From positions 62,001 to 126,000 of the forward strand of contig NW_027590142.1 in the NCBI RefSeq assembly GCF_964213995.1: a stretch of DNA of 64,000 nt. The letters are read 5' to 3'. The stretch is from Mustelus asterias (taxonomy: Eukaryota). Under the pieces are notes generated by a model that saw nothing but the letters and a program-made list of their open reading frames with translations, had not been told where the DNA came from and did no database searches. Made by a program: the position numbers and the translations under genes. Positions 7,161 to 55,865 of the stretch are shown in pieces (position 1 is the first letter of the stretch; the number at the start of each line of letters is the position of its first letter).

Positions 7161-7647
7161 ATGGAGCTATGACAGCTCTGTCTGTCTCTGGTTATTGCCC
7201 TGGTCATAGGTCGGTCATTTTGAACCTTTGAATGAAATCCGCCAATCACCATATTAATTGCCCATTTCCATTTCTCGGCGATTATTCCGTTGTTGTTACT
7301 CCTTCTAACCCGCTGCGTGTCTGTTGTCTATTTTCAGAGATGAGTAACGGTGACTCAGTGTCCCAGTCAGAACCAGGAGTTGAAGCAGCAGAGGGTGAAG
7401 ATTCAGCAATACCCTGCAGTTACTCTGTATCGAGTTCAGTTGCAGTCTATGTCCTGTTCTGGCATCGCCAGTATCCACACCGAGCTCCTCAGTATCTGCT
7501 CAGAGCCGATAGTTATGGATTTACCGACACGGCTCCCGGCCTTAAACATTTCAGCGGGAATCTCAGCCAGACACAAAACACTTTTCACTTGTCCATGAAA
7601 GATTTGAAGATGTTAGACAACACCGTGTATTACTGTGCACTCAGACC
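7161..7647 (+). pseudogene. TCR alpha/delta V segment (leader 7161-7209, V exon 7338-7647); stop codon in leader
   Basis: Leader MEL*QLCLSLVIALVI then gt donor; open V exon GDSVSQ...C...WHRQYP...VYYCALRP; CRE-like gacgtca at ~7074. Confidence 0.85.
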
Positions 7648-7686
7648 CACAGTAAATGAGGCTCCCGCGGACCTCGTACAAAAACT
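7648..7686 (+). other. 23-RSS of V at 7161
   Basis: CACAGTA, 23 nt spacer, ACAAAAACT. Confidence 0.9.
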
Positions 7687-8584: not shown

Positions 8585-9061
8585 ATGTTCCCTGCGTGTT
8601 CTACTGATAATAATGGACATGCTGCCCCGTGAGTCTGAGCTCAAATCCTCAGTGTTTGTTCAATGGGTTATATTCACTCACAGATTTCTCACACAGTCTA
8701 TATGTTGTTACAGGAACCAATGGCCAAACTTCAGTTTCCCAGGAGCCGCCTGAATGAACGGTTCAGGAAGTACAGACGGTAATTTTGAACTGCAGTTATA
8801 AAGCTAAGTACGTTGACCAAACTCTATTCTGGTACATCCTGTACCCCGGAGAAGCTCCGAGATATTTATTGAAAAGTTACGGCCAGGGGAAGGGGGATAA
8901 GTCTCCTGATTTTTCGGACCAGTTTTCTGCTAATTTGGACAGAGACAAGAAAACAGCTCCATTAAATATCACCGGGGTCCATGTCTCTGACTCTGCCGTG
9001 TATCTGTAACAGTGTGCGCTGAACCGCAGTTACAGAGACGCAGTTAGTCCGTACAAAAACC
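8585..9061 (+). pseudogene. TCR alpha/delta V pseudogene (leader 8585-8628, V exon from 8714, damaged RSS)
   Basis: Frameshift after the ATG; V reads TNGQTSVSQEPPE*TVQE...LNCSY...LFWY...DSAVYL*; nonamer ACAAAAACC at 9053-9061 with a degenerate heptamer. Confidence 0.85.
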
Positions 9062-12887: not shown

Positions 12888-14722
12888 CATAGAGTTATAG
12901 AAGTTTACAACATGGAAACAGGCCCTTCGGTTCAACTTGTCCATGCCGCCCTTTTCTTTTAACCCGGAAGCGAGTCCCAGTTGCCCGCATTTGGCCCATA
13001 TTCCTCTATACCCATCTTACTCAATCAACAGTCCAAATGCTTTTTAAAAGACAATATTGTATCTGCCTCTACTACTACCTCTGGCAGCTTGTTCCAGACA
13101 CTCACCAACCGTTGTGTGAAAAAATTGCCACTCTGGACACTTTTGTATCTCTCCTCTCACCTTAAACCTATGCCCTCTAGTTTTAGACTTCCCTAACTTT
13201 GGAGAACGATATTGACTACCTAGCTGATCTATGCCCCTCATTATTTTATAGACCTCTATAAGATCACCCCTAAGCCTTCTACGTTCGAGAGAAAAAAGTC
13301 CCAGTCTATCCAACCTCTCCTTATAACTCAAACCATCAAGTCCCAGTAGCATCCTAGTAGATATTGTCTGCACTCTTTGTAGTTTAATAATATCTTTTCT
13401 ATAATTGGGTGACCAGAACTGTACACAGTGTTCCTACTGTGGCCTTACCAATGTTTTGTACAACTTTAAGAAGACATCCCAACTCCTGTATTGAATGCTC
13501 TGACCAATGAAACCAAGCATGCTGAATGCCTTTTTCACCACTCTGTCCACCTGTGACTCCACTTTCAAGGAGCTGTGAACATGTACCCCTCGATCTCTTT
13601 GTTTTATAACTCTCCCCAACGCCCTACCATTAACTGAGTAAGTTCTACTCTGGTTCAACCTATCAAAATGCATCACCTCACATTTATCTAAATTAAACTC
13701 CACCTGCCATTCGTCAGCCCACTGGCCCAATTGATCAAGATCCCGTTGCAATCCGAGATAACCTTCTTCACTGTCCACTATGCCACCAATCTTGGTGTCA
13801 TCTGCAAACTTACGAACCATGTCCCCTATATTCTCATCCAAATCATTAATATAAATGACAAATAACAGTGGACCCAGCACTGATCCCTGAGGCACACCGC
13901 TGGTCTCAGGCCTCCCGTTTGAAAAACAACCCTGTGCAACCACCCTCTGGCTTCTGTCATCAAGCCAATTTTGTATCCATTTAGCTACCCACCCTGGATT
14001 CCATGAGATTTAACCTCATCCAACAACCTACAATGCGGTATCTTGTTAAAGGCCTTGCTAAAGGCCATGTAGACAACACCAGCTGCACTGACCTCATCTA
14101 CCTTCTTGGTTACCCCTTCAAAAAACTCAATCAAACTTGGGAGACGTGATTTTCCACTCACAAAGCCATGCTGACTGTCCCTAATCAGTCCTTGCATCTC
14201 TAAATGCCTGTAGATCCTGTCTCTCAAAATACTTCCAACAACCTTACTCCACACAGGTGTGAGGCTCAGTGGCCTGTAGTTCCCAGGCTTTTCCCTTCAG
14301 CCTTTTTTAAACAAAGGCATAACATTTGCCACCCTCAAATCTTCAGGCACCTCACCTGTGACTATCGATGATTGAAATATCACTGCTAGGGGACACACAA
14401 TTTCCTCCCGAGCCTTCCACAATGTCCTGGGATACACTTCATCACGTCCCGGGGATTTATCTACCTTGATACGCTTTAAGACTTCCAACACCTCCTTCTC
14501 TGTAATATGTACACTCCTCAAGACAGCACTATTTATTTCCCCAAGTTTCCTAACATCCATGCTTTTCTCAACAATAAATACTGACGAGAAATATTCATTG
14601 AGGATCTCACCCATATCTTGTGGATCCGCACATCGATGACCTTGTTGATCCTTAACTGGCCCTACTTTCTCCCTTGTCACTCTTTTGCTCTTTATGTATT
14701 TGTAGAAGCTCTTTGTATTCAC
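12888..14722 (-). mobile_element. CR1-clade LINE, truncated and frameshifted RT
   Basis: SGVPQGSVLGPLLFVIYINDLD, KFADDTKIGG and LFSLERRRLRGDLIEVYK. Confidence 0.9.
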
Positions 14723-21149: not shown

Positions 21150-22235
21150 AATAGAAAAGCTACAGCACAAACAGGCCCTTCGGCCCACAAGTTGCGCCAA
21201 ACATGTCCCTACCTACTAGGCTTACCTATAACCCTCTATCTTACTAACTTCCATGAACTTATCCAAAGGTATCTTAAAAGAACCTATAGAATCCGCCTCC
21301 ACCACCACTACCGGCAGCCGATTCCACGCACCCACCACCCTCTGAGTGAAAAACTTACCCCGAACATCTCCTCTGTACCTACTCCCCAGCACCCTAATCT
21401 CAAACCATCAAGTCCTGGTAGCATCCTAGTAAATCTTTTCTGCACTCTTTCTAGTTTAATAATATCCTTTCTATACTAGGTTGACAAGAACTGTAAACAG
21501 TTTTCCAAATGTGGCCTTACCAATGTCTTGTAGAACTTCAACAAGACGTCCCAACTCCTGTATTCAATGTTCTGACCGATGAAACCAAGCATGCCGAATG
21601 CCTTCTTCACCACTCGTCCACCTGAGACTCCACTTTCAAGGAGCTATGAACCTGTACCCTTAGATCTTTTTGTTCTATAACTCTCCATAACACCCTCCCA
21701 TTAAATGAGTAAGTCCTGTTCTGGTTCGATCGACGAAAATGGATCACTTCGCATTCATCTAAATAAAACTCCATCTTCCATTCACCAGCCCACTGGCCCA
21801 ATTGATTAAGATCCCATTGCAATCCTTGATAACCTTCTTCACTGTCCACTATGCCACCAATCTTGGTGTCATCTGAAAACTTACTAACCACGCCTCCTAA
21901 ATTCTCATCCAAATCATTAATATAAATGACAAATATCAGTGGACCCAGCACTCATTCCCGGAGGCACACTGCTGGCCATAGGCCTCTAGTTTGAAAGACA
22001 ACCCTCTACAACCACCCTCTGTCTTCTGTCATCAAGCCAATTTTGTATCCATTTAACAACCTCAACCTAGATCCCGTGACAGTGTTTCCAGCTTCTGCTC
22101 CAACCGAACCATGCGGGTTGTGAGGAGCTGCCCCTGGTCACACAACCCGCAAACATAGCCGCCAGGGACACTAGGAAGTTCCCTGATCTCCCACATCGAG
22201 CAGGAGAAACATATCACGGCCCTAACTGCCATCTC
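21150..22235 (-). mobile_element. Composite CR1 LINE fragments
   Basis: LGPLIFVIYINDLDE and KFSDDTKIGG; inverted twin at 53342-53875. Confidence 0.85.
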
Positions 22236-22580
22236 TGCACTTGGACACTGAAAAATAAAAGAATAAGAATCTTACTTGCTTTTGACAAAGAGGGACATTC
22301 CCAAACTCTGGGTGGCAACAGCCAGAGGGGTCGCGGGACGAGATTCTGGGGTCGGGAGCTCCGAGGCAGCGATAACTATGGAACCTCGACTGAATGTTCA
22401 TAGCTTTCCGCCACCTTTAGATTCTCGAGATTTATTTTAAACAATGGGCGTGGCCTAAATTGACGACGTTCGGGCCTGATGTCTTTCAGTTCAGCTCTGA
22501 GATCCAGTGTCCCAGAGGAGTCCAGCTCTGCAGTCTCCAGCTCCCCGTCATATAAACCATCAGGTCCGGGCAGCAGAGCG

Positions 22581-23070
22581 ATGGGCATTCTTCTTGTTTT
22601 CAGCCTGTGTGTCTATTTACCCAGTGAGTACTGATCACACTAAACTACATTGTGTGGATTGAATATAAAGCTGCCCCAGTCCATCCCAATTACAGACATT
22701 GTCTGGAGTTTTAGCCCCGTTGTGTGGTTCAGCTCTGATGGGCCTTTAAACTCTCTGTGTTTAATTTCCAGGATCTTTCAGTCAGTCAGTGGTACAGAGC
22801 CCGGCAGCGGTGACCAGAAAGGAATGTCAGTCCCTCACCATCACCTGTGTTTTCTATGGTGGATTCTACGCTCGTGCTTTGGAGAGGGCGGAATTCTTCA
22901 GGCAAACACAGGCTGGGACAGAGCGGGAGCGGATCTCCGGCGGAGGGAGATTTGTTGAGTCGGTGAATAAAGCAGAAAAGACATTTTCGTTGGAAATTCG
23001 GGATGTGAGAGTTGAAGACGCCGCCACCTATTACTGTAAAGCTCATTACAAAGGAGACGGCTGGGACAGT
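22581..23070 (+). CDS. NAR-TCR V gene, already joined to D (leader 22581-22623, V-D exon 22772-23070)
   Basis: Leader MGILLVFSLCVYLP then gtgagt; IgNAR-like V lacking CDR2 (RQTQAGTERERISGGGRFVESVNKAEKTFSL), extra FR1 Cys (RKECQS); YYCKAHYKGDGWDS is followed directly by a 12-RSS. Confidence 0.9.
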
Positions 23071-23098
23071 CACAGTGAAAAGGAGCTGAGCAAATACC
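23071..23098 (+). other. 12-RSS (D-type 3' RSS)
   Basis: CACAGTG, 12 nt spacer, GCAAATACC; near-identical to the 3' RSS of the free D at 52106-52133. Confidence 0.9.
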
Positions 23099-23408
23099 TG
23101 TGCACAATTACCTTATACATTCGCAGAGCCCAGAGAGAGAATTATGGGTTGATGTTATTAGCGCTGCAATCTGGATTAATTACATTGCACTTTCCATCAC
23201 TCACATCTTTCTTTGATATTTTTCTCAGTTAATATGAAGCGACTATCTCCTACCTGGGGATATTTACTGAGAACGCGGGGCCTCAAAAAGAACAGTTTGA
23301 ACTGACAGAGACTTCAAAACATTGAATAATATTTATTGATTTAAATCCCCCGAATAATGGGAACTTCCAAATGACTGTGATGATTTCCCGTCAAGTTGAG
23401 CAGTCGGT

Positions 23409-23499
23409 AGTTCTTGTACGGGGAGACTGAGATCGGTATCAGTGTGTACGACCTGGTATGAAGCCGATGGATCAGGGACGGTGGTGACTGTCACAGCCG
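23409..23499 (+). other. NAR-TCR J segment (23447-23499) with 22-spacer RSS (23409-23446)
   Basis: AGTTCTTGT, 22 nt spacer, CAGTGTG; J reads TTWYEADGSGTVVTVTA plus G, then a gtaagt phase-1 donor. Confidence 0.9.
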
Positions 23500-24577: not shown

Positions 24578-25172
24578 CATTTGAGCACCGATGTTCAACA
24601 TCATTCCATCCCCATTGGAGCTGATGAATCACAGTCATTCCCTGTTGGATCTTGCTGTGCGCTTCGACGTAGCGCAGCTGGGTTAGTCACTTGGAACGGA
24701 TTACCTCACTGATAATAAAATGTTCCCTCGTGTCTGTCTCTTAGGAAGGGAAATAGAAAGTGAAATGTAACATACATCATTGAATCCTGGAGAGCGAAAG
24801 GGTGACATTCGGCCCCTCGAGTAGATGCAGCCCTTTATAAGTGAAATCCAGTTCTTCCCCTCAGTCATGAATTTTCCCCATAACCCTGTTTTATTCCTGT
24901 TCCGGCGCTTGACTATTCCCGTGTGTTTGTCACTGTTGATTCAGCTCCCACCATCATTCTGACATTGCATTCCAGACCGTTGGATCTTGTTGTGTAAAGA
25001 AAACCTCATTTTCCACTGGTTTACAATAATAATAACAGTGAATACAGTTCCATCAGATTTAAAGTGATAATAGCACCGAATAAAACTGAGCTACTCCCGC
25101 AATTGACACATTCCCCTGGTAAACAATGACTGAAACACAGAAGAAAACGCTGTTTCTTTTTTTATCCTCCAG

Positions 25173-25478
25173 ATTCTAGTTCCCTGGTGTCGAAAAATCC
25201 GCCTCTCCAAACCTCTGCTGCTGGTGACACGGTTGCTTTAAGCTGTGAATATTCAGGGTTCTGTCAGTACACAGTACACTGGTACAGTCAGTCCGCAGGG
25301 CAGGCTCTGAAATACCTGCTTCAGACACACACTTCAGGAGAGGAGAATAAAGAAAATGCTGCCGGGGGGAGAATTTCTGCTTCTATCGATTCTGCCGAGA
25401 AAATCAGCTGGTTAAAGATCTCCAAACTGGAACTGAGCGATTCCGCTGTGTATTACTGTGCACTGAGTCGGAGCACAG
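25173..25478 (+). CDS. Leaderless NAR-TCR supporting V-delta segment
   Basis: Acceptor tcctccag; in frame with the J donor: DSSSLVSKNPP...LSCEYSGFCQYTVHWY...DSAVYYCALSRS; extra CDR1 Cys; no leader exon seen between J and this exon. Confidence 0.9.
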
Positions 25479-25655
25479 CACAGTGATACAGAACATGGAG
25501 AGAGCTGTACAAAAACCTGGACATGGTGCGTATTACAGACACAGTGATACAGAACACAGAAAGAGCTGTACAAAAAAATGAACATGGTGAAAATCACAGA
25601 CATAGTGATACAGAACACAGAGAGAGCTGTACAAAAACCTTAAAATGGTGAGGTC
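25479..25655 (+). repeat. Three tandem 61-bp units, each containing a 23-RSS
   Basis: Heptamers at 25479, 25540 and 25601; nonamers at 25509, 25570 and 25631. Confidence 0.92.
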
Positions 25656-46100: not shown

Positions 46101-46576
46101 ATGAGCATGATGCTAGCGATATTTCTCTGTGTGTTCCTTGTCATCTTATCTTGTGAGTAGTTGGATATTATCAGAAAATTTGCACAGTTTCTGTTTGACA
46201 TCAATCATTCCCTGTGCAGTGACACAAACTGGATTCACCTCACCATAATTATTGTTTCTTCCCTTTAGCAGGCGTCCAGTCGGATGTGGTGTTGACCCAG
46301 CCAGAGGCAGAAACGGGGGTAGTAGGGCAATCCCTGACCCTAACCTGTAAAACCAGCGGATTTGATATTGGGAGCTTCATCATGCTCTGGTACCGGCACA
46401 GTCCTGAGACGGGACTGGGATGGCTGCTTTGGTACAATAATGAAAATAGCAAGGATTACAATCAGGAGCTTGGTGGACGATTCATTGCATCCAAGGACCT
46501 TTCCAACAACGTATTCGATCTCTCTGTCAGCACGTTAACAATAGCAGACAGCGCGACGTATTACTGTGCACAGCAG
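46101..46576 (+). CDS. Intact IgH-like V gene inside the TCR V array (leader 46101-46152, V exon 46272-46576)
   Basis: Leader MSMMLAIFLCVFLVILS then gtgagt; VQSDVVLTQPEAETG...LTCKTSGFD...GRFIASKDLSNNVF...YYCAQQ matches shark IgM/IgW VH framework motifs. Confidence 0.9.
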
Positions 46577-46615
46577 CACAGTGATATAGATCACATCCAG
46601 ACTTGTACAAAAACC
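46577..46615 (+). other. Consensus 23-RSS
   Basis: CACAGTG, 23 nt spacer, ACAAAAACC. Confidence 0.95.
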
Positions 46616-49480: not shown

Positions 49481-51668
49481 ACTCGTGTCGAGAATAATGA
49501 ACACCTTGAATATATTCCATTCTCAACGAAAGTCATCACTCAGGAAGCAGCCAACACCCATCCATGTCTCACCCTTCAGAGCAAAGCTCTGTAAGGATAA
49601 CATCCTGCAATTATGTGTGGAGTCTGGAGAAACTGAGCTGACACAGAATATTCGCCATCCAAATTCGTATTTATATGGAATACCCAAGGAGAGATAATTG
49701 CATTGGCAGGAAGGCAGGTGTCAAAATCACGCAGATTTAAATGATTTGCACTCGTTTCTGGTTGTTCAGGAGCCATTTAGTTAGAGTGGGGGAGCCGGTT
49801 CGTTAGTGATTTTCAAAGGGGAGTACGTTCAGTATTTACAATGTCAACATTGTAAATATTATGTGTCAATTGCAGGGAGGTGGAAACATGTCGAAAAGGG
49901 GTTGAGTGATGGAATCTTCCATCCTGGTAGAACAGAAGGTTTATAGGAAGAACATCACTTTGGACTTCTTCTCCATGTCTGATCTCATCCTGACCTAACA
50001 ACATGTGTCCGCTCATTGATGGTTGTGGGTTTTCAATACTGGGATATGGGCAGTTGATAGGCCACTGGTATTGACACTAGATTAGCGACTCAGGGACCCA
50101 GGTTACTAAGTCGGGCGGGTACCCAAGTTCAAATCCGAACAAGGCAGATGATGAAATTTGAAGTAAATAAAAAAACCATTGAGACCATTGTCGATTGTTG
50201 TCAAAACCCATCTTGTTTACTAATGCCCTTTTAGGGAAGGAAATGAGCCTAAATGTGACTCCAGAAACACAGCAATATGGTTGGCTCTTAAAGGTTTCTG
50301 GTCAATGGATTCCCCCAGGATTTTTCAGCTATGAAAGAAGCATTTAGATGACCACCTGACACGCCTTATATACAAGGTTATGGACCAAGAGCTGGAAGAT
50401 GTGATTGGAATGGATACATGTTTGATGGCTAGCACAGACAAGACGGGCTGAAGGTCTGGAGAAGTTTATGACTCTTTGACTAACTCGACAGCTCCCCTTT
50501 CAAATCAGCCATGGGACATTAAACGCCCAACAGACAAGGCAGGCTGTTTGATACCTCGTCTAAACATTGATGAGTGACATTGCAGAACTTCCTCAACACA
50601 AACAGAAAATGCTAGAAAATCTCACAGCTCTGACAGCATCTGTGGGGAGCGAATAGTGCACACGTTTCGAGTCTAGATGACCTTTCGCTAGCTCTGACGA
50701 AGGGTTCTCTAGACTCGAAGCAAAAACAGAAAATTCTGGAAAATCCCAGCAGGACTGACAGCATCTGTGAAGAGAAAATGGAGTCAAGGTTTTGAGGCTG
50801 GATAACATAGAACCAAGCTTACTTGGTCTGACTCCAGATGCACAGCAAGGCTTGCCATCTGGAATGATCTAACAACTCTCCGGTTTCCTCCTACAGTCCG
50901 AAACATGTGCTGGTTAGGTGCATTGACCATGCTAAATTGTCCCTCAGTGTACCCGAACAGGTGCCAGGGTGTGGCGACGAGGGGATTGTCACAGTAACTT
51001 CACTGCAGTGTCAATGTAAGCCCAGCTGTTGCACTAATTAATAAACTTTAAACAATCCATTCAATTCAGGGCAATTAGGGATGTGAGCGAAGTCCTCACC
51101 CCTTGAGATAATAAATAAAACCAAAACCGATTCACCTACTTCTCATCAAATCCTTCGATGGATGCCCTTCTCACCGTCTCTGGAATCGTCTCCAACCTGT
51201 GTTCTTTTTCAATCTGTTGTTTCTATAGTTTTTGCCTTTTGAAAGTGCCCCTAATTCTTTTCGCCCCTCAATCCGCAACTATGCCTTCAATTGCCTTGTT
51301 CCTGAGCTGGGGAATTCTCTAGGTTAATTCCTCACCGCCCCGCCTGCCCGCCCCCCCCCCCACCCCTCCCCCAATCCCCCCCTCCCTCATCCCCGCCCAC
51401 TTTTCCACCTCAGCTTCCTTACCTCCGTTCCTTTAAAAATTTTCCTGAAAAATTACCCCAACCGCAGAACATCCTGCTGGTTATCTAACCCCTACAGGTG
51501 CGTTGTGCCAAATATGTTTAGCCAGTGCTCATGTGAAATCACATGGACGGTTTTAATCGGGTGCGTTGCTTCATGGGAGTAGAATTGATAGTTGCATCAA
51601 TCAGCGACATTCTGCTGTCGCAGCTGAAATGATACATGCGACAACAGTAGCAGCAACAGCTGCTGAAG

Positions 51669-51734
51669 AGTTTTTGTGCTGGCATGTATCACTGTGCACA
51701 GTGATGGGCCTCGGCTTCCCATCATACTAAAACT
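51669..51734. other. Precise RSS signal joint (12-RSS fused heptamer-to-heptamer with a 22-RSS)
   Basis: AGTTTTTGT, 12 nt, CACTGTG | CACAGTG, 22 nt, ACTAAAACT. Confidence 0.92.
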
Positions 51735-52060
51735 CTCACTGAAGATTTTCACATAAACAAATGAAAAAGCGGAGTTAATCTTCCCTGAAACCCGCACAGT
51801 TCCATCGCACACCGTCAATCCCACAGTCACGTTTATAATGAGGATTTGATTATTACCGTTAACATTCTGAGTGTTTTAAACAAGGAGTGTGTGCGGAAGC
51901 TGACATCTTTCCCGGGTTAGGTGTTGATGAATGAAGAATGGAAATGACTGATCCCAGTTACAAACCCAAACAAAAGATGGGATCATCGTCTCTCAGCTGG
52001 AACTGGGAACCGCAGTCCCCGCTGTTTAATTAATTTCCCTACATCTCACACAGTATCTGG

Positions 52061-52133
52061 GGTTTTGATGCTAAATTATAACACTGTGTAAATGGTTAGG
52101 AGAGTCACAGTGAAAAGAAGCTGAGCAAATACC
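52061..52133 (+). other. Unrearranged NAR-TCR D segment (52089-52105, taaatggttaggagagt) with 12/12 RSS
   Basis: GGTTTTGAT, 12 nt, CACTGTG, D, CACAGTG, 12 nt, GCAAATACC. Confidence 0.9.
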
Positions 52134-52480
52134 TGTGCACAATTACAATATACATTCGCAGGGCCCAGAGAGAGAATTATGGATTGATGTTATTAGCGCT
52201 GCAATCTGGATTAATTACATTGCACTTTCCATCACTCACATCTTTCTTTGATATTTTTCTCAGTTAATATGAAGCGACTATCTCCTCCCTGGGGATATTT
52301 ACTGAGAACGCGGGGCCTCAAAAAGAACAGTTTGAACCGACAGAGACTTCAAAACATTGAATAATATTTATTGATTTAAATCCCCCGAATAATTGGGAAC
52401 TTCCAAATGACTGTGATGATTTCCCGTCAAGTTGAGTAGTCGGTAGTTCTTGTACGGGGAGACTGAGATCGGTATCACTG
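52106..52480 (+). repeat. Direct near-identical copy of the D-J intervening DNA at 23071-23444, ending in a truncated J 22-RSS; J is absent
   Basis: Colinear with few substitutions and one indel; nonamer 52445-52453, 22 nt spacer, CACTG, then inverted V. Confidence 0.92.
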
Positions 52481-52962
52481 GCCGTCTCCTTTGTAATGAG
52501 CTTTACAGAAATAGGTGGCGGTGTCTTCAACTCTCACATCCCGAATTTCCAACGAAAATTTCTTTTCTGCTTTATTCACCGACACAACAAATCTCCCTCC
52601 GCCGGAGATCCACTCCCGCTCCGTTCCGGTCTGTGTTTGTTTGAAGAATTCCGCCCTCTCCAAAGCACGAGCGTAGAATCCACCATAGAAAACACAGGTG
52701 ATGGTGAGGGACTGACATTCCTTCCTGGTCACCGCTGCCGGGCTCTGTACCACTGACTGACTGAAAGATCCTGGAAATTAAACACAAGAGAGTTTAAAGG
52801 ATCATCAGAGCTGAACCACACAACGGGGCTAAAACCCCAGACAGTGTCTGTAATTGGGATGGACTGGGGCAGCTTTATATTCAATCCACACAATGTAGTT
52901 TAGTGTGATCAGTACCCACTGGGTAAATAGACACACAGGCTGAAAACGAGAAGAATTCCCAT
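52481..52962 (-). pseudogene. Second NAR-TCR V(D) copy, inverted; ORF open but RSS heptamer broken (leader 52962-52920, exon 52770-52481)
   Basis: Near-identical to 22581-23061 (YFCKAHYKGDG); adjacent heptamer reads GCCAGTG and lacks the essential CAC. Confidence 0.85.
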
Positions 52963-53314
52963 CGCTCTGCTGCCCGGAGCTGATGGTTGATATGACGGGG
53001 AGCTGGAGACTGCAGAGCTGGACTGCTCTGGGACACTGGATCTCAGAGCGGAACTGAAAGACATCAGGCCCGAACGTCGTCAATTTTGGCCACGCCCATT
53101 GTTTAAAATAAATCTCGAGAATCTAAAGGTGGCGGAAAGCTATGAACATTCAGTCAAGGTTCCATAGTTATCGCTGCCTCGGAGCTCCCGACCCGAGAAT
53201 CTCGTCCCGCGACTCCTCTGGCTGTTGCCACCCAGAGTTTGGGAATGTCCCTCTTTGTCAAAAACAAGTAAGATTCTTATTCTTTTATTTTTTTTCAGTG
53301 TCCAAGTGCAGAGA

Positions 53315-53341
53315 TAACCCTAACCCTAAGCCTAACCCTAA
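53315..53341. repeat. Short interstitial telomeric repeat (TAACCC)x~4.5
   Basis: taaccctaaccctaagcctaaccctaa. Confidence 0.85.
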
Positions 53342-54292
53342 TGAGTGCTGGGTCCACTGTTATTTGTCACTTATATTAATGATTTGGATGAGAATTTAGG
53401 AGGCGTGGTGTGATTTGCAGATGACACCAAGATTGGTGGCATAGTGGACAGTGAAGAAGGTTATCAAGGATTGGGCTAGTGGACTGATGAATGGAAGATG
53501 AAGTTTTATTTAGATGAATGCAAGGTGATCCAAATTGGTCGGTCGAACCAGAACAGGACTTACTCATTTAATGGGAGGGTGTTATGGAAAGCTATAGAAC
53601 AAAAGGATCTCAGGGTACAGGTTCATAGTTCCTTGAAAGTGGAGTCTCAGGTGGACAAAGTGGTGAAGAAGGCATTCAGCATGCTTGGTTTCATCAGTCA
53701 GAACATTGAATACGGGTGTTAGGACGTCTTGCTGAAGTTGCACAAGACATTGGTAAGGCCACATTTTGGATACTGTGTATAGTTCTTGTCAACCTATTAC
53801 AGAAAGGATATTATTAAACTAGAAATAGTGCAGAAAAGATTTACTAGGATGCTACCAGGACTTGATGGTTTGAGTTATAAGGAGAGGCTGGATATACTGG
53901 GACTTTTTAGGGTTGATCTTATAGAGGTCTATAAAATAGCGAGGGCATCGATCAGTTTGATGGTCAACATATTTTCCAAAAGGCGGGAGAGTCTACAACT
54001 AGAGGGCATAAGTTTAAGTTGAGAAGGGAGAGATACAAGAGGGTCCAGAAGGGCAATTTTTAACAAAGAGGGTGGCGAATGCCTGGAACAAACCGCTAGA
54101 GGCCGTAGTAGAGGCGGATACAATTTTGTCTTTTAAAAAGATTTTGGACAGTTCCATGGGTAAAATGAGTATGGAGGGATATGGGCCAAACGTGGGCAAT
54201 TGGGACTAGCTTAGTGGTTAATAAAAGGGCGACATGGACAAGTTGGGCCAAAAGGCCTGTTTCTATGCTGTAAACGTCTATGACTCTATGAC
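53342..54292 (+). mobile_element. CR1 RT and 3' end, twin of 21400-21956
   Basis: Shares NRTYSFNGRVLW and EQKDLRVQVHSS variants with the 21.6 kb copy. Confidence 0.85.
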
Positions 54293-55005
54293 TGCGGAAC
54301 ACACAGGGTGAAGTGAGTGTGATAGACACTAGCTTCAAGAAGGTTTCACACCACAAGTCCAGACAGATAGATGGGTGACTGCCAGGACAGGCAGGCATAT
54401 AATGCAGGAGTCTCCTGTGGCGCTTCCCCTCTCAAACAAGTATACCGTTTTGGATACTGTTGGGGAGGTGGTGGGGTGGAGGGGGTGGGGGGAATAACCT
54501 CTCAGGGGAAAATACCAGCAGTAGCCAGGCCTGTGGCACCACAACTGGTTCTGCTGTAGAGCAGGGTCGAGCTAAGTTCAAGCGAGTTAAAGTTGTAGGA
54601 GACTCGATAGCCAGGGGCACAGTCAGGCGTTTCTGTGGCAGCGACAGACATTCTAGGATGCTGTGGTCCCTCGCTGGTTCCAGGGTCCTGGGTGTCTCTG
54701 AGCAGGTACAGGCATCCTGAAACGGAAGGGTGAACAGATAGATGTCATTGTCCATATTGGCACGAATGACAGAGGCAGGAAAGGGGAAGAGGTCCTGTGA
54801 AGAAAATTCAGGGAGTTAAGTTGAGAGCTAAGAGCAGGACCTCTGGGGTAGTAATCTCAGGATTACCGCCCCCCCCCCCGCCGCCCCCGCCATGCCACGT
54901 GCTAGTGAGGCTTGCAACAGGGAGATAATACAGTTGAATACGTGGCTGAAGAGCCGGTGTATGAGGGAGGGCTTTAGAGATATGAATCACCGGGATGTTT
55001 TCAGG
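54293..55005 (+). mobile_element. CR1 ORF1 (SGNH/GDSL esterase) fragment
   Basis: VVGDSIARGTVRRFCG and VIVHIGTND motifs. Confidence 0.7.
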
Positions 55006-55134
55006 CAACTGAAGGATCTTATTGGAGGATTGTGCTATATTTTTCTTGTTCCTATTATTTTATTTTAATACAATTTAATGCAAATGAACCTATTCACAGA
55101 ATCGATACCAATCTCAGGAACAGCGATAGGCGAA

Positions 55135-55420
55135 CTCGAAGACATACACACACGAACACATTCACAAACTCAAACAGACACACGAAAACTCACAGGCACA
55201 CACACAAACACATATACGGATATACACAATCTCAGACAAGCAGCTGCAGGCAAACTGGCAGACACACACAAACACATTCACGGACGCACACAGACATGCA
55301 AACAAAAACACAGACTTACATAAACACAAGCACAGACACACACTCACAGACATGCAGACAAACAGACAAACACATAGACATGCACACCATCAAACGCACT
55401 CTCATAAACAGAGAGACAAA
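55135..55420. repeat. CA-rich low-complexity tract
   Basis: Degenerate (CA)n; inverted counterpart of the TG tract after 19345. Confidence 0.8.
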
Positions 55421-55865
55421 CTGAGACAATGAAGGGTTGAAGTCAATTTCACTCTAATCCACCTGCTGGGCACTAAGATAATAAGAGAAGCAAATCTAAA
55501 GCTCGTTGTGTTGGGTTTGTTGTGAAATGAGAAAAAGTATAAATATACCGCATAGCTCAGAATGGGACTGGAATTGATGATTTCTCAGCTGTCTGTGATC
55601 TCTTTGAACAAATATAGAATTGGAGAGATTTTAACGCGTGAATTGTAATATCTAATGGCGTAAAGTATCTGGGTGCAGAGTGGATTTGATAAAGGCTGGA
55701 AGACAGACTGAGGTAATGAGATTGAAGCTGCTGTTCTGAGTGAATGGTTTTTTTGCAGGGAGCGATGGATGGGGGAGAGAGGGATGGATGGAGAGAGGGA
55801 GGGAGAGTGAGATGGATGGAGGAAGAGATGGATCGATAGGGGTGAATGTGAGAAGCTGAAGTTTA

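What the first reader, a model, noticed from the sequence alone, without database searches (positions are those of the whole stretch)
51669..51734. Perfect 12/22 V(D)J signal joint fixed in the chromosome
Seen: consensus heptamers abut exactly (CACTGTG|CACAGTG). Each has a correctly spaced nonamer, at 12 nt on the left and 22 nt on the right, so the pair obeys the 12/23 rule. Known: this is the diagnostic RAG/NHEJ product. It is normally lost on excision circles and stays in the chromosome only after inversional joining. Inference: the 22-RSS sits ~330 bp upstream of a NAR-type D, where a NAR V's RSS should be, so a V was cut away and replaced by a foreign 12-RSS. If this sequence is germline, it is direct evidence of heritable RAG activity at a TCR locus.
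Basis: partly seen in the sequence, partly recalled or inferred. Interest (0 to 1): 0.92.

Follow-up and report, generated by a model that had tools for sequence, protein, structure and literature searches.

The report
RAG signal joint scar in shark NAR-TCR cassette
Two recombination signals fused head to head, with a matching second junction 784 bases away, mark a shark T-cell-receptor gene cassette that the V(D)J recombinase cut twice; whether this happened in the germ line is still open.

Summary
At 51669-51734 a 12-spacer signal (nonamer 8/9, perfect heptamer) abuts a 22-spacer signal (perfect heptamer, nonamer 7/9) with no base between them. About 3e-10 such pairs are expected per window.

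The 22-signal is the native signal of a NAR-type V. Contigs of the same species and of a related one join it to a V coding end, and a bamboo-shark protein reads from V into its homologue.

That V was not lost. It lies inverted at 52481, joined to the J-type 22-signal of the same cassette, whose heptamer is cut short. The D (12/12 signals) between them is untouched.

The simplest lawful route is two 12/22 events that use the same 12-signal twice. The second event cuts it out of an earlier chromosomal signal joint, which gives a precise signal joint plus a pseudo-hybrid joint.

"Fixed" is not supported. None of the 32 listed contig pieces from three samples of the species bridges either junction.

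My odds are about 95% that RAG made it and about 60-65% that it is constitutional (germ-line) in the assembled animal. The remainder is a lymphocyte product or an assembly chimera.

First readers noted further chromosomal signal joints on other pieces of this genome; I did not test those notes.

The parts
51669..51696 (+). 12-spacer recombination signal 'x' (nonamer 51669-77, spacer 51678-89, heptamer 51690-96), of unknown parent segment; its left flank is single-copy DNA
   Evidence: no paralogue of 51056-51696 in the window; depth of 51472-51655 is like single-copy flanks (table 2)
51697..51734 (+). 22-spacer signal 'a' (heptamer 51697-703, spacer 51704-25, nonamer 51726-34), the native signal of a NAR-type V
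   Evidence: contigs join 51697 to a V coding end on the opposite strand (table 5); its translation matches the read-through tail of P0004
51735..52060 (+). V-to-D intervening DNA of the cassette
   Evidence: lies between signal a and the D 5' signal; contigs that begin in V coding run through it (pieces 11, 20, 28)
52061..52088 (+). 5' 12-spacer signal of the D (heptamer 52082-88)
   Evidence: 12 or 13 nt spacer, nonamer 7/9
52089..52105 (+). D coding segment, 17 nt, not rearranged
   Evidence: its 3' part aligns with the end of the joined V-D of cassette 1
52106..52133 (+). 3' 12-spacer signal of the D
   Evidence: 97% identical to the signal behind the joined V-D of cassette 1
52134..52444 (+). 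D-to-J intervening DNA
   Evidence: 52099-52480 matches 23064-23444 on the same strand at 97%
52445..52480 (+). J-type 22-spacer signal (nonamer 52445-53, spacer 52454-75) with only 5 nt of heptamer left (52476-80); no J follows
   Evidence: in cassette 1 the same signal is followed by a J at 23447
52481..52770 (-). NAR-type V exon, inverted, open frame; its coding end (52481) is joined to the shortened J heptamer (second junction, pseudo-hybrid joint)
   Evidence: 52481-53315 matches 23061-22231 inverted at 96%; V-set; the 16 best solved structures are all VNAR domains
52920..52962 (-). leader exon of the inverted V (ATG at 52962-52960, GT donor after 52920)
   Evidence: read by alignment with cassette 1; inference
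52963..53315 (-). upstream (promoter-side) DNA of the inverted V, homologous to 22231-22580

Best explanation
This is a scar of the V(D)J recombinase in one cassette of the doubly rearranging NAR-TCR (TCR delta) gene family.

Original layout (inferred). The cassette lay on the minus strand in the order V, 22-signal, D with 12/12 signals, 22-signal, J. An unrelated 12-signal 'x' sat beyond the J.

Step 1 (inferred). x paired with the J signal. The two coding ends, and all DNA between them (the J and probably the supporting V), left on a circle. The chromosome kept a signal joint, x|J-signal.

Step 2 (inferred). x was cut out of that joint again and paired with the V's own 22-signal. This inverted 51697-52480.

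Products (shown in the sequence). There is a new, exact signal joint at 51696|51697. At 52480|52481 the old J heptamer, handled like a coding end and now short of a full heptamer, is joined to the V coding end. This is a 'pseudo-hybrid joint'.

Consequences. Both steps obey the 12/23 rule. The cassette is dead: there is no J, and the V now faces a crippled signal.

Origin. I think it more likely than not that the events happened in germ-line or early embryonic cells of the assembled animal's lineage and that the allele still segregates. I do not think it is fixed.
For: Chance is excluded for the exact head-to-head 12/22 pair.

The 22-signal is a V signal. Contigs of sample X13 (same species) and X1 (another labelled organism, 5-9% divergent) join 51697 to 52488 on the opposite strand, that is, a V coding end next to this heptamer (table 5). 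The translation of 51697-51753 matches the tail that follows the V end in the Chiloscyllium punctatum protein P0004, 12 of 19 residues, E 2e-8.

Cassette 1 in the same window shows the normal order and strand: 52099-52480 matches 23064-23444 directly, and 52481-53315 matches 23061-22231 inverted. Both breakpoints sit at signal/coding borders.

The junction styles fit the pathway: one exact, one shortened. Re-cutting of chromosomal signal joints in cis, leaving a new signal joint plus a pseudo-hybrid joint, is documented in PMC1820826 (passages).

Germ-line RAG footprints are already known in sharks: joined genes (PMC2193156) and a hybrid-joint inversion (PMC2193153). Cassette 1 looks V-D joined.

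The structure sits inside a long assembled piece; notes place other findings 26 kb before and 13 kb beyond the window.
Against: No independent read support. None of the 32 listed contig pieces bridges 51696|51697 or 52480|52481 (table 8; 178,241 pieces are not listed).

In X13 the exact left-flank contig ends at 51696 plus one letter that does not fit. In X11 it ends at 51678. In X11, X13 and X14 the contigs that hold the 22-signal carry 28, 41 and 51 further letters on the left that are not the 12-signal.

Those contigs differ from the window by 2.6-4% over 51697-52480, so the window's own copy is not clearly seen in these samples.

If sample S8 is the assembled animal, this argues for a rare (somatic) molecule or an assembly fault.

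The parent segment of x and the lost J were not found, so step 1 is inferred only. The original J heptamer of this cassette is unknown: cassette 1 has CAGTGTG, and with that form more than 2 nt were lost and 3 were added.
Confidence: 0.55

Rival explanations
1. The recombinase made the same product, but in a T-lineage cell. The rearranged molecule, or a chimeric path through it, entered the assembly. It is then neither heritable nor constitutional.
For: None of the 32 listed contig pieces of three samples bridges either junction. Contigs stop or change exactly at 51696|51697. Non-productive products of this kind are common in thymocytes (PMC1820826). First readers list several more chromosomal signal joints on other pieces of this assembly (untested), which a lymphocyte-rich DNA source could also produce.
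Against: A polyclonal somatic event is present in far fewer than 1% of molecules, and consensus assembly normally drops it. The structure lies in a piece of more than 100 kb. Logan contigs drop minor variants and are mosaics of paralogues here: different samples keep different window letters at 51789, 51830 and 51917-24 (table 3). Their silence is therefore weak evidence. It is not known whether any of the three samples is the assembled animal; at 50061 sample X11 shows only a different letter from the window.
Confidence: 0.28
2. The recombinase acted, but by another route. First the whole V-to-J interval (51697-52480) was flipped by hybrid joints between the two 22-signals, which breaks the 12/23 rule. 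Later the V signal, now next to the J, paired with x. J and the DNA behind it were lost on a circle, and the signal joint was left behind.
For: The end product is the same. A germ-line flip of a signal-ended interval by hybrid joints is documented in a horned-shark IgH cluster (PMC2193153, passages).
Against: It needs a 22/22 synapse. In true hybrid joints the signal end is usually the intact one, whereas here the heptamer is shortened and the V end appears full length. The V-end inference rests on 41 = 34 + 7 letters in X13 piece 20 and on the same 6 codons after the Cys-Lys-Ala motif as in P0004.
Confidence: 0.1
3. An excised signal circle was re-inserted in trans at a V that carried the 12-signal x (episome reintegration).
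For: Reintegration leaves exactly this pair of junctions, a signal joint plus a pseudo-hybrid joint (PMC1820826). V-D joined NAR cassettes with a 12-signal exist, for example cassette 1.
Against: The circle would need a 22|22 signal joint. Signal x and its flank show no similarity to the 12-signal and D-J spacer that follow the 96%-identical V of cassette 1, so x is not this V's own signal.
Confidence: 0.04
4. It is not a recombination product. Alternatives are an emptied D element (its own 12 and 23 signals joined), ends of Transib-like transposons lying together, a fold-back sequencing artefact, or chance.
For: A 12|22 head-to-head pair has the geometry of a D segment without coding bases. 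The fused heptamers form an 18-nt palindrome.
Against: The 22-signal and its flank belong to a V, not a D. Depth is single-copy, so it is not a transposon family (table 2). The palindrome stops after 18 nt and the flanks are unrelated, so it is not a fold-back. The chance expectation is 3e-10.
Confidence: 0.02

Closest known systems
Chromosomal signal joints left by inversional V(D)J joining in lymphocytes, and their 'ongoing' recombination in cis (Vanura et al. 2007, PMC1820826; passages read)
   Same: Exact heptamer-to-heptamer fusion of a 12 and a 23-class signal kept in the chromosome. Re-use of one signal from that joint yields a new signal joint plus a pseudo-hybrid joint (signal joined to a coding end, imprecise).
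   Different: Those cases are somatic events in mouse and human thymocytes detected by PCR. Here the product stands in a genome assembly of a shark, has no productive coding joint beside it, and may be constitutional.
Germ-line-joined Ig genes of cartilaginous fish (Lee et al. 2000, PMC2193156; passages read)
   Same: Footprints of RAG-type recombination in inherited DNA of sharks. The paper judges the events recent and possibly ongoing.
   Different: Those are coding joints (VJ, VD, VDJ) whose signal joints were lost. The term 'signal joint' occurs 0 times in that paper. Here the signal joint itself is kept, and the locus is a TCR delta / NAR-TCR cassette.
Germ-line hybrid-joint inversion between D1 and D2 of a horned-shark IgH cluster (described in Lewis & Wu 2000, PMC2193153; passages read; the original paper, Kokubu 1988, not read)
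   Same: A signal-ended interval is inverted in the germ line, so that signals face foreign coding ends.
   Different: That was one 12/23 event with two hybrid joints and no signal joint. Here there is one signal joint and one signal-to-coding joint, and three signals are involved.
Lewis & Wu's proposal that D segments arose from germ-line signal joints with inserted bases (PMC2193153, figure 2B ii legend)
   Same: A chromosomal 12|23-class signal joint is the proposed raw material, and this one has that geometry.
   Different: There are no inserted bases here, so there is no D coding sequence. The commentary states that only its cases i and iii had evidence from sharks.

Membership tests
V(D)J signal joint | Two heptamers fused head to head without coding bases | tested here: met
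   CACTGTG|CACAGTG at 51690-51703
V(D)J signal joint | One 12-spacer and one 23-class signal, each with a nonamer at the right distance | tested here: met
   12 nt with nonamer 8/9; 22 nt with nonamer 7/9. A 22-nt spacer is also used by the J signals of both cassettes.
V(D)J signal joint | Each signal can be traced to a gene segment from which it was cut | tested here: inconclusive
   The 22-signal is traced to a NAR V. The parent segment of the 12-signal was not found in the window and could not be searched for elsewhere.
V(D)J signal joint | A reciprocal junction with coding-joint style processing | tested here: met
   At 52480|52481 a shortened J heptamer is joined to the V coding end, at the other end of the inverted 784 bp.
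V(D)J signal joint | Made by RAG1/RAG2 and end joining | not testable with these tools
   Inferred from breakpoints at signal borders only.
Germ-line (heritable) RAG rearrangement of cartilaginous fish | Present in non-lymphoid DNA, at allelic dosage, in more than one animal or transmitted | tested here: inconclusive
   None of the 32 listed contig pieces from 3 samples bridges the joint. Contigs cannot show absence, and the tissue and identity of the samples are not on record.
NAR-TCR cassette | V of the NAR type (single-domain V as in IgNAR) | tested here: met
   The 16 best solved-structure matches are all VNAR domains, best E 3e-18. V-set domain.
NAR-TCR cassette | Own D and J followed by a supporting V delta | tested here: not met
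   Cassette 1 has a J (23447) and a supporting V (25172-25477). The cassette studied here has a D but no J and no supporting V in the window, so it is a broken member.

The most novel reading that the evidence does not exclude
RAG is, or recently was, active in the germ line of this shark at TCR cassettes, and it acted here twice, the second time by re-cutting a chromosomal signal joint. The result is a still-segregating structural allele. Its 12|22 signal joint is the 'empty D' that Lewis & Wu proposed as raw material for new D segments and for swapping signal types, a step for which no natural example was known to them.
Probability: 0.3. Interest if true: 0.85.

Novelty: new variant of a known kind. 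Interest (0 to 1): 0.62.

Why it matters
Germ-line joining in sharks is the main natural evidence that the V(D)J recombinase keeps reshaping antigen-receptor loci over evolutionary time. Until now that evidence has consisted of coding joints and one hybrid-joint inversion. A signal joint kept in inherited DNA, together with its partner junction, would show three things. First, the recombinase's by-products also persist. Second, chromosomal signal joints are re-used outside lymphocytes. Third, non-productive and even destructive events reach the germ line at a TCR locus. It would also give a concrete example of the intermediate proposed for the birth of D segments. If the structure turns out to be somatic, it becomes a caution that reference assemblies of immune loci can carry lymphocyte rearrangements.

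Tried and rejected
1. Emptied D, chance, transposon ends, fold-back artefact: rejected (see rivals).

2. One simple inversion between the V signal and x: rejected. It would leave the J and a V-to-Cx coding joint, and it would then need a deletion ending at a place without a signal.

3. Second NAR J or supporting V for this cassette: not present in the window. The motif scan and BLAST found 1 J, at 23447. tblastn found NAR V only at 22783 and 52481, and one supporting V.

4. J-like or signal-like features on the minus strand left of x (49500-51696): none seen in six-frame translations or in the signal scan.

5. Protein search with the 77-aa frame that spans the joint, in the hope of finding contigs that carry it: no candidate. 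Such frames are evidently not in that collection, so the blank says nothing.

The V|signal junction in other sharks is therefore known only through the read-through tail of P0004.

7. The NAR-TCR primary paper (PMC1458790) and Ott 2021 (PMC7909615) are not held. I know them only from the reference list seen and from recall. No supplementary file was opened, and genomic maps of NAR-TCR cassettes may sit in such files.

8. Literature: searches found no paper that describes a signal joint kept in germ-line DNA of a cartilaginous fish. This covers only the held open-access library.

9. I did not scan the microbial, viral or metagenome collections for the joint, because they do not hold shark genomes.

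10. The V was searched as a single exon. Leader and V exon were not joined.

Full report
THE OBSERVATION. The left signal has nonamer AGTTTTTGT (51669-77, 8/9), a 12-nt spacer and heptamer CACTGTG (51690-96). It is followed at once by heptamer CACAGTG (51697-703), a 22-nt spacer and nonamer ACTAAAACT (51726-34, 7/9). The fused 14-mer occurs once in the window even with one mismatch allowed; 100 shuffles gave a mean of 0.01. With both nonamers at the right distances I expect about 3e-10 per window. Chance is excluded.

THE SURROUNDINGS. The window is part of a TCR V region. It holds V segments with 23-class signals at about 7358, 8734, 10766 (minus strand), 25172 and 46271, and two NAR-type V genes.

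Cassette 1 (plus strand) shows the working layout:
- leader at 22581;
- V exon 22772-23070, whose end already carries D-like bases;
- a 12-signal at 23071;
- a 22-signal with heptamer CAGTGTG at 23409-46;
- a J at 23447;
- a supporting V at 25172-25477 with a perfect 23-signal.

Cassette 2 is the one at issue. To the right of the joint lie 326 bp of spacer DNA, a 17-nt D (52089-52105) with 12-signals on both sides, 311 bp of spacer and a J-type 22-signal (nonamer 52445-53, spacer 52454-75). BLAST of the window on itself gives the key result: 52099-52480 matches 23064-23444 on the same strand (97%), whereas 52481-53315 matches 23061-22231 inverted (96%). Where the J should start, an inverted NAR V begins with its coding end. 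Only 5 nt of the J heptamer (CACTG) are left. The V is open and has leader and upstream DNA. It is a V-set domain, and its 16 best matches among solved structures are all VNAR domains. There is no second NAR J and no second supporting V in the window.

WHOSE SIGNAL IS THE 22-SIGNAL? Two independent results say it belongs to a NAR V.
- Contigs of public runs laid on 50000-55500 include a joint '51697 | 52488, opposite strands' in X13 (same species label as the best holders) and in X1 (another labelled organism whose pieces differ from the window by about 5-9%). That joint is a V coding end lying next to this heptamer, the unrearranged state.
- In X11, X13 and X14 the pieces that start at 51697/8 carry 28, 41 and 51 more letters on their left that do not fit the 12-signal.
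- A protein search with the V exon found four relatives. One of them, P0004 from Chiloscyllium punctatum, reads from the V end straight into a tail that matches the translation of 51697-51753 in 12 of 19 residues, E 2e-8 for the pair.

An 'emptied D' is excluded.

THE 12-SIGNAL. Its flank, 51056-51696, has no paralogue in the window. It has single-copy depth in the runs (table 2). It shows no J or other signal nearby. It points rightwards, like the 5' signal of a D or a J, and lies 5.1 kb downstream of an Ig-heavy-chain-like V with a perfect 23-signal (46271-46615). Whether it once served that V is speculation.

HOW THE STRUCTURE AROSE. Three signals are involved, so one event cannot do it. 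I went through the possible orders of events.
- A single inversion between the V signal and x would leave the J in place and give a V-to-Cx coding joint. Reaching the present state from there would need a deletion ending where no signal exists.
- A flip of the V-to-J interval by hybrid joints needs a 22/22 synapse.
- Reinsertion of a circle needs a 22|22 signal joint and a V that natively carries x, and the lack of homology between x's flank and the flank of cassette 1 speaks against that.

The route that obeys the 12/23 rule throughout is as follows. The cassette stood on the minus strand.
- Step 1: x pairs with the J signal. Both coding ends and the DNA between them (the J, probably the supporting V, and x's own segment) leave on a circle. 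A signal joint x|J-signal stays.
- Step 2: x is cut out of that joint and pairs with the V's 22-signal. They have the same orientation, so 51697-52480 is inverted.

This gives an exact signal joint x|V-signal. It also gives a junction in which the former J heptamer, treated as a coding end, is shortened and joined to the V end.

The observed junction styles fit this route. The signal joint is exact. At the other junction the V end appears full length. That is inferred from X13 piece 20, which has 41 letters before the heptamer: 34 fit up to 52488, leaving 7, and the window also has 7. P0004 likewise has 6 codons after the Cys-Lys-Ala motif. The heptamer there lacks 2 nt if it was canonical, or 5 nt with 3 added if it was like cassette 1's.

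Vanura et al. (PMC1820826, passages) describe exactly this signature, a new signal joint plus a pseudo-hybrid joint, for ongoing recombination of chromosomal signal joints in cis. Steps 1 and 2 are inferred; only the end product is shown.

GERM LINE OR NOT. This is the weak point. The only read evidence available was Logan contigs of three samples from one study (X11, X13, X14) and one run of a related organism.
- Results against a fixed joint: none of the 32 listed pieces bridges 51696|51697 or 52480|52481. The exact left-flank piece ends at 51678 in X11, and at 51696 plus one letter that does not fit in X13. The pieces holding the 22-signal run on into V coding without a break in all three samples.
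- Limits of that evidence: 178,241 pieces are not listed, and contigs drop minor variants. The pieces over 51697-52480 differ from the window by 2.6-4% and are mosaics. X13 keeps the window's letters at 51789 and 51830. X14 keeps them at 51917-24. At 51876, 51883, 51904, 52183 and 52287 no run shows the window's letter. The pieces therefore come at least partly from paralogous cassettes; piece 12 of X11 carries cassette 1's letters at 52183, 52287, 52338 and 52393.
- Small extra depth with the window's state at 52183 and 52393 in X11, and at 52393 in X14, hints that cassette 2's DNA exists in those samples.
- I cannot tell whether any sample is the assembled animal. The share of words held was only 0.58 at best, and at 50061 X11 shows only a letter different from the window.

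Weighing this against the low chance that a polyclonal somatic event survives consensus assembly in a piece of more than 100 kb, I put constitutional or germ-line origin at about 60-65%. I put a somatic or chimeric origin at about 30%. 'Fixed in the species' is not supported.

WHAT IS KNOWN. Germ-line joined Ig genes in sharks are attributed to RAG activity in germ cells and judged recent (PMC2193156, passages; the term 'signal joint' occurs 0 times there). A germ-line inversion by hybrid joints in a horned-shark IgH cluster is described in PMC2193153 (passages). The same commentary proposes that signal joints with inserted bases could create D segments and says that only its other two cases had shark evidence. 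[quoted passage not shown] The primary paper was not held. Searches found no report of a signal joint kept in germ-line DNA of a cartilaginous fish, within the open-access library only and with supplements not seen.

First readers of this scan noted further chromosomal signal joints and V-D joined NAR cassettes on other pieces of the same genome. I did not test those notes. They are leads, not support.

VERDICT. The claim of a fixed, heritable joint is unproven. The decisive experiment is simple: junction-spanning long reads, or PCR on non-lymphoid DNA of the assembled animal and of others.

Noticed in passing
window 23041-23098: The V of cassette 1 ends in D-like bases and is followed by the D's 3' 12-signal instead of a 22-signal. 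This looks like a germ-line V-D join. It shares the bases GGAGACGGC with the end of the inverted V.
   Followed up: partly
window 25479-25578: The supporting V delta of cassette 1 is followed by two 23-signals 61 bp apart (25479 perfect; 25540 with nonamer 7/9). A first-reader note counts three.
   Followed up: no
window 46271-46615: V exon whose best solved-structure matches are antibody heavy-chain variable domains, with a perfect 23-signal, on the plus strand 5.1 kb upstream of the 12-signal x. It may be a TCR-associated Ig-heavy-like V.
   Followed up: partly
window 53316-53340: Short telomere-like (CCCTAA)n run exactly where homology between the two cassettes' upstream regions is interrupted. 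Cassette 1 has 275 bp of other DNA there (21956-22231).
   Followed up: no
window 50736-51103 and 53312-54415: Very high contig depth in all four runs (about 1e6 against tens for the flanks). These are high-copy interspersed repeats. One lies upstream of both NAR V genes and at 12888-14006.
   Followed up: no
window 52092-52098 (run X1): In the related organism the D is longer: C, GGGG and GG are put in at 52092, 52093 and 52098. The D coding segment therefore varies in length between taxa.
   Followed up: no
window 7358-7686, 8734-9030, 10766-10489: Three further V segments. The first (plus strand) and the third (minus strand) carry 23-signals, so V genes of both orientations are interleaved here.
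   Followed up: no
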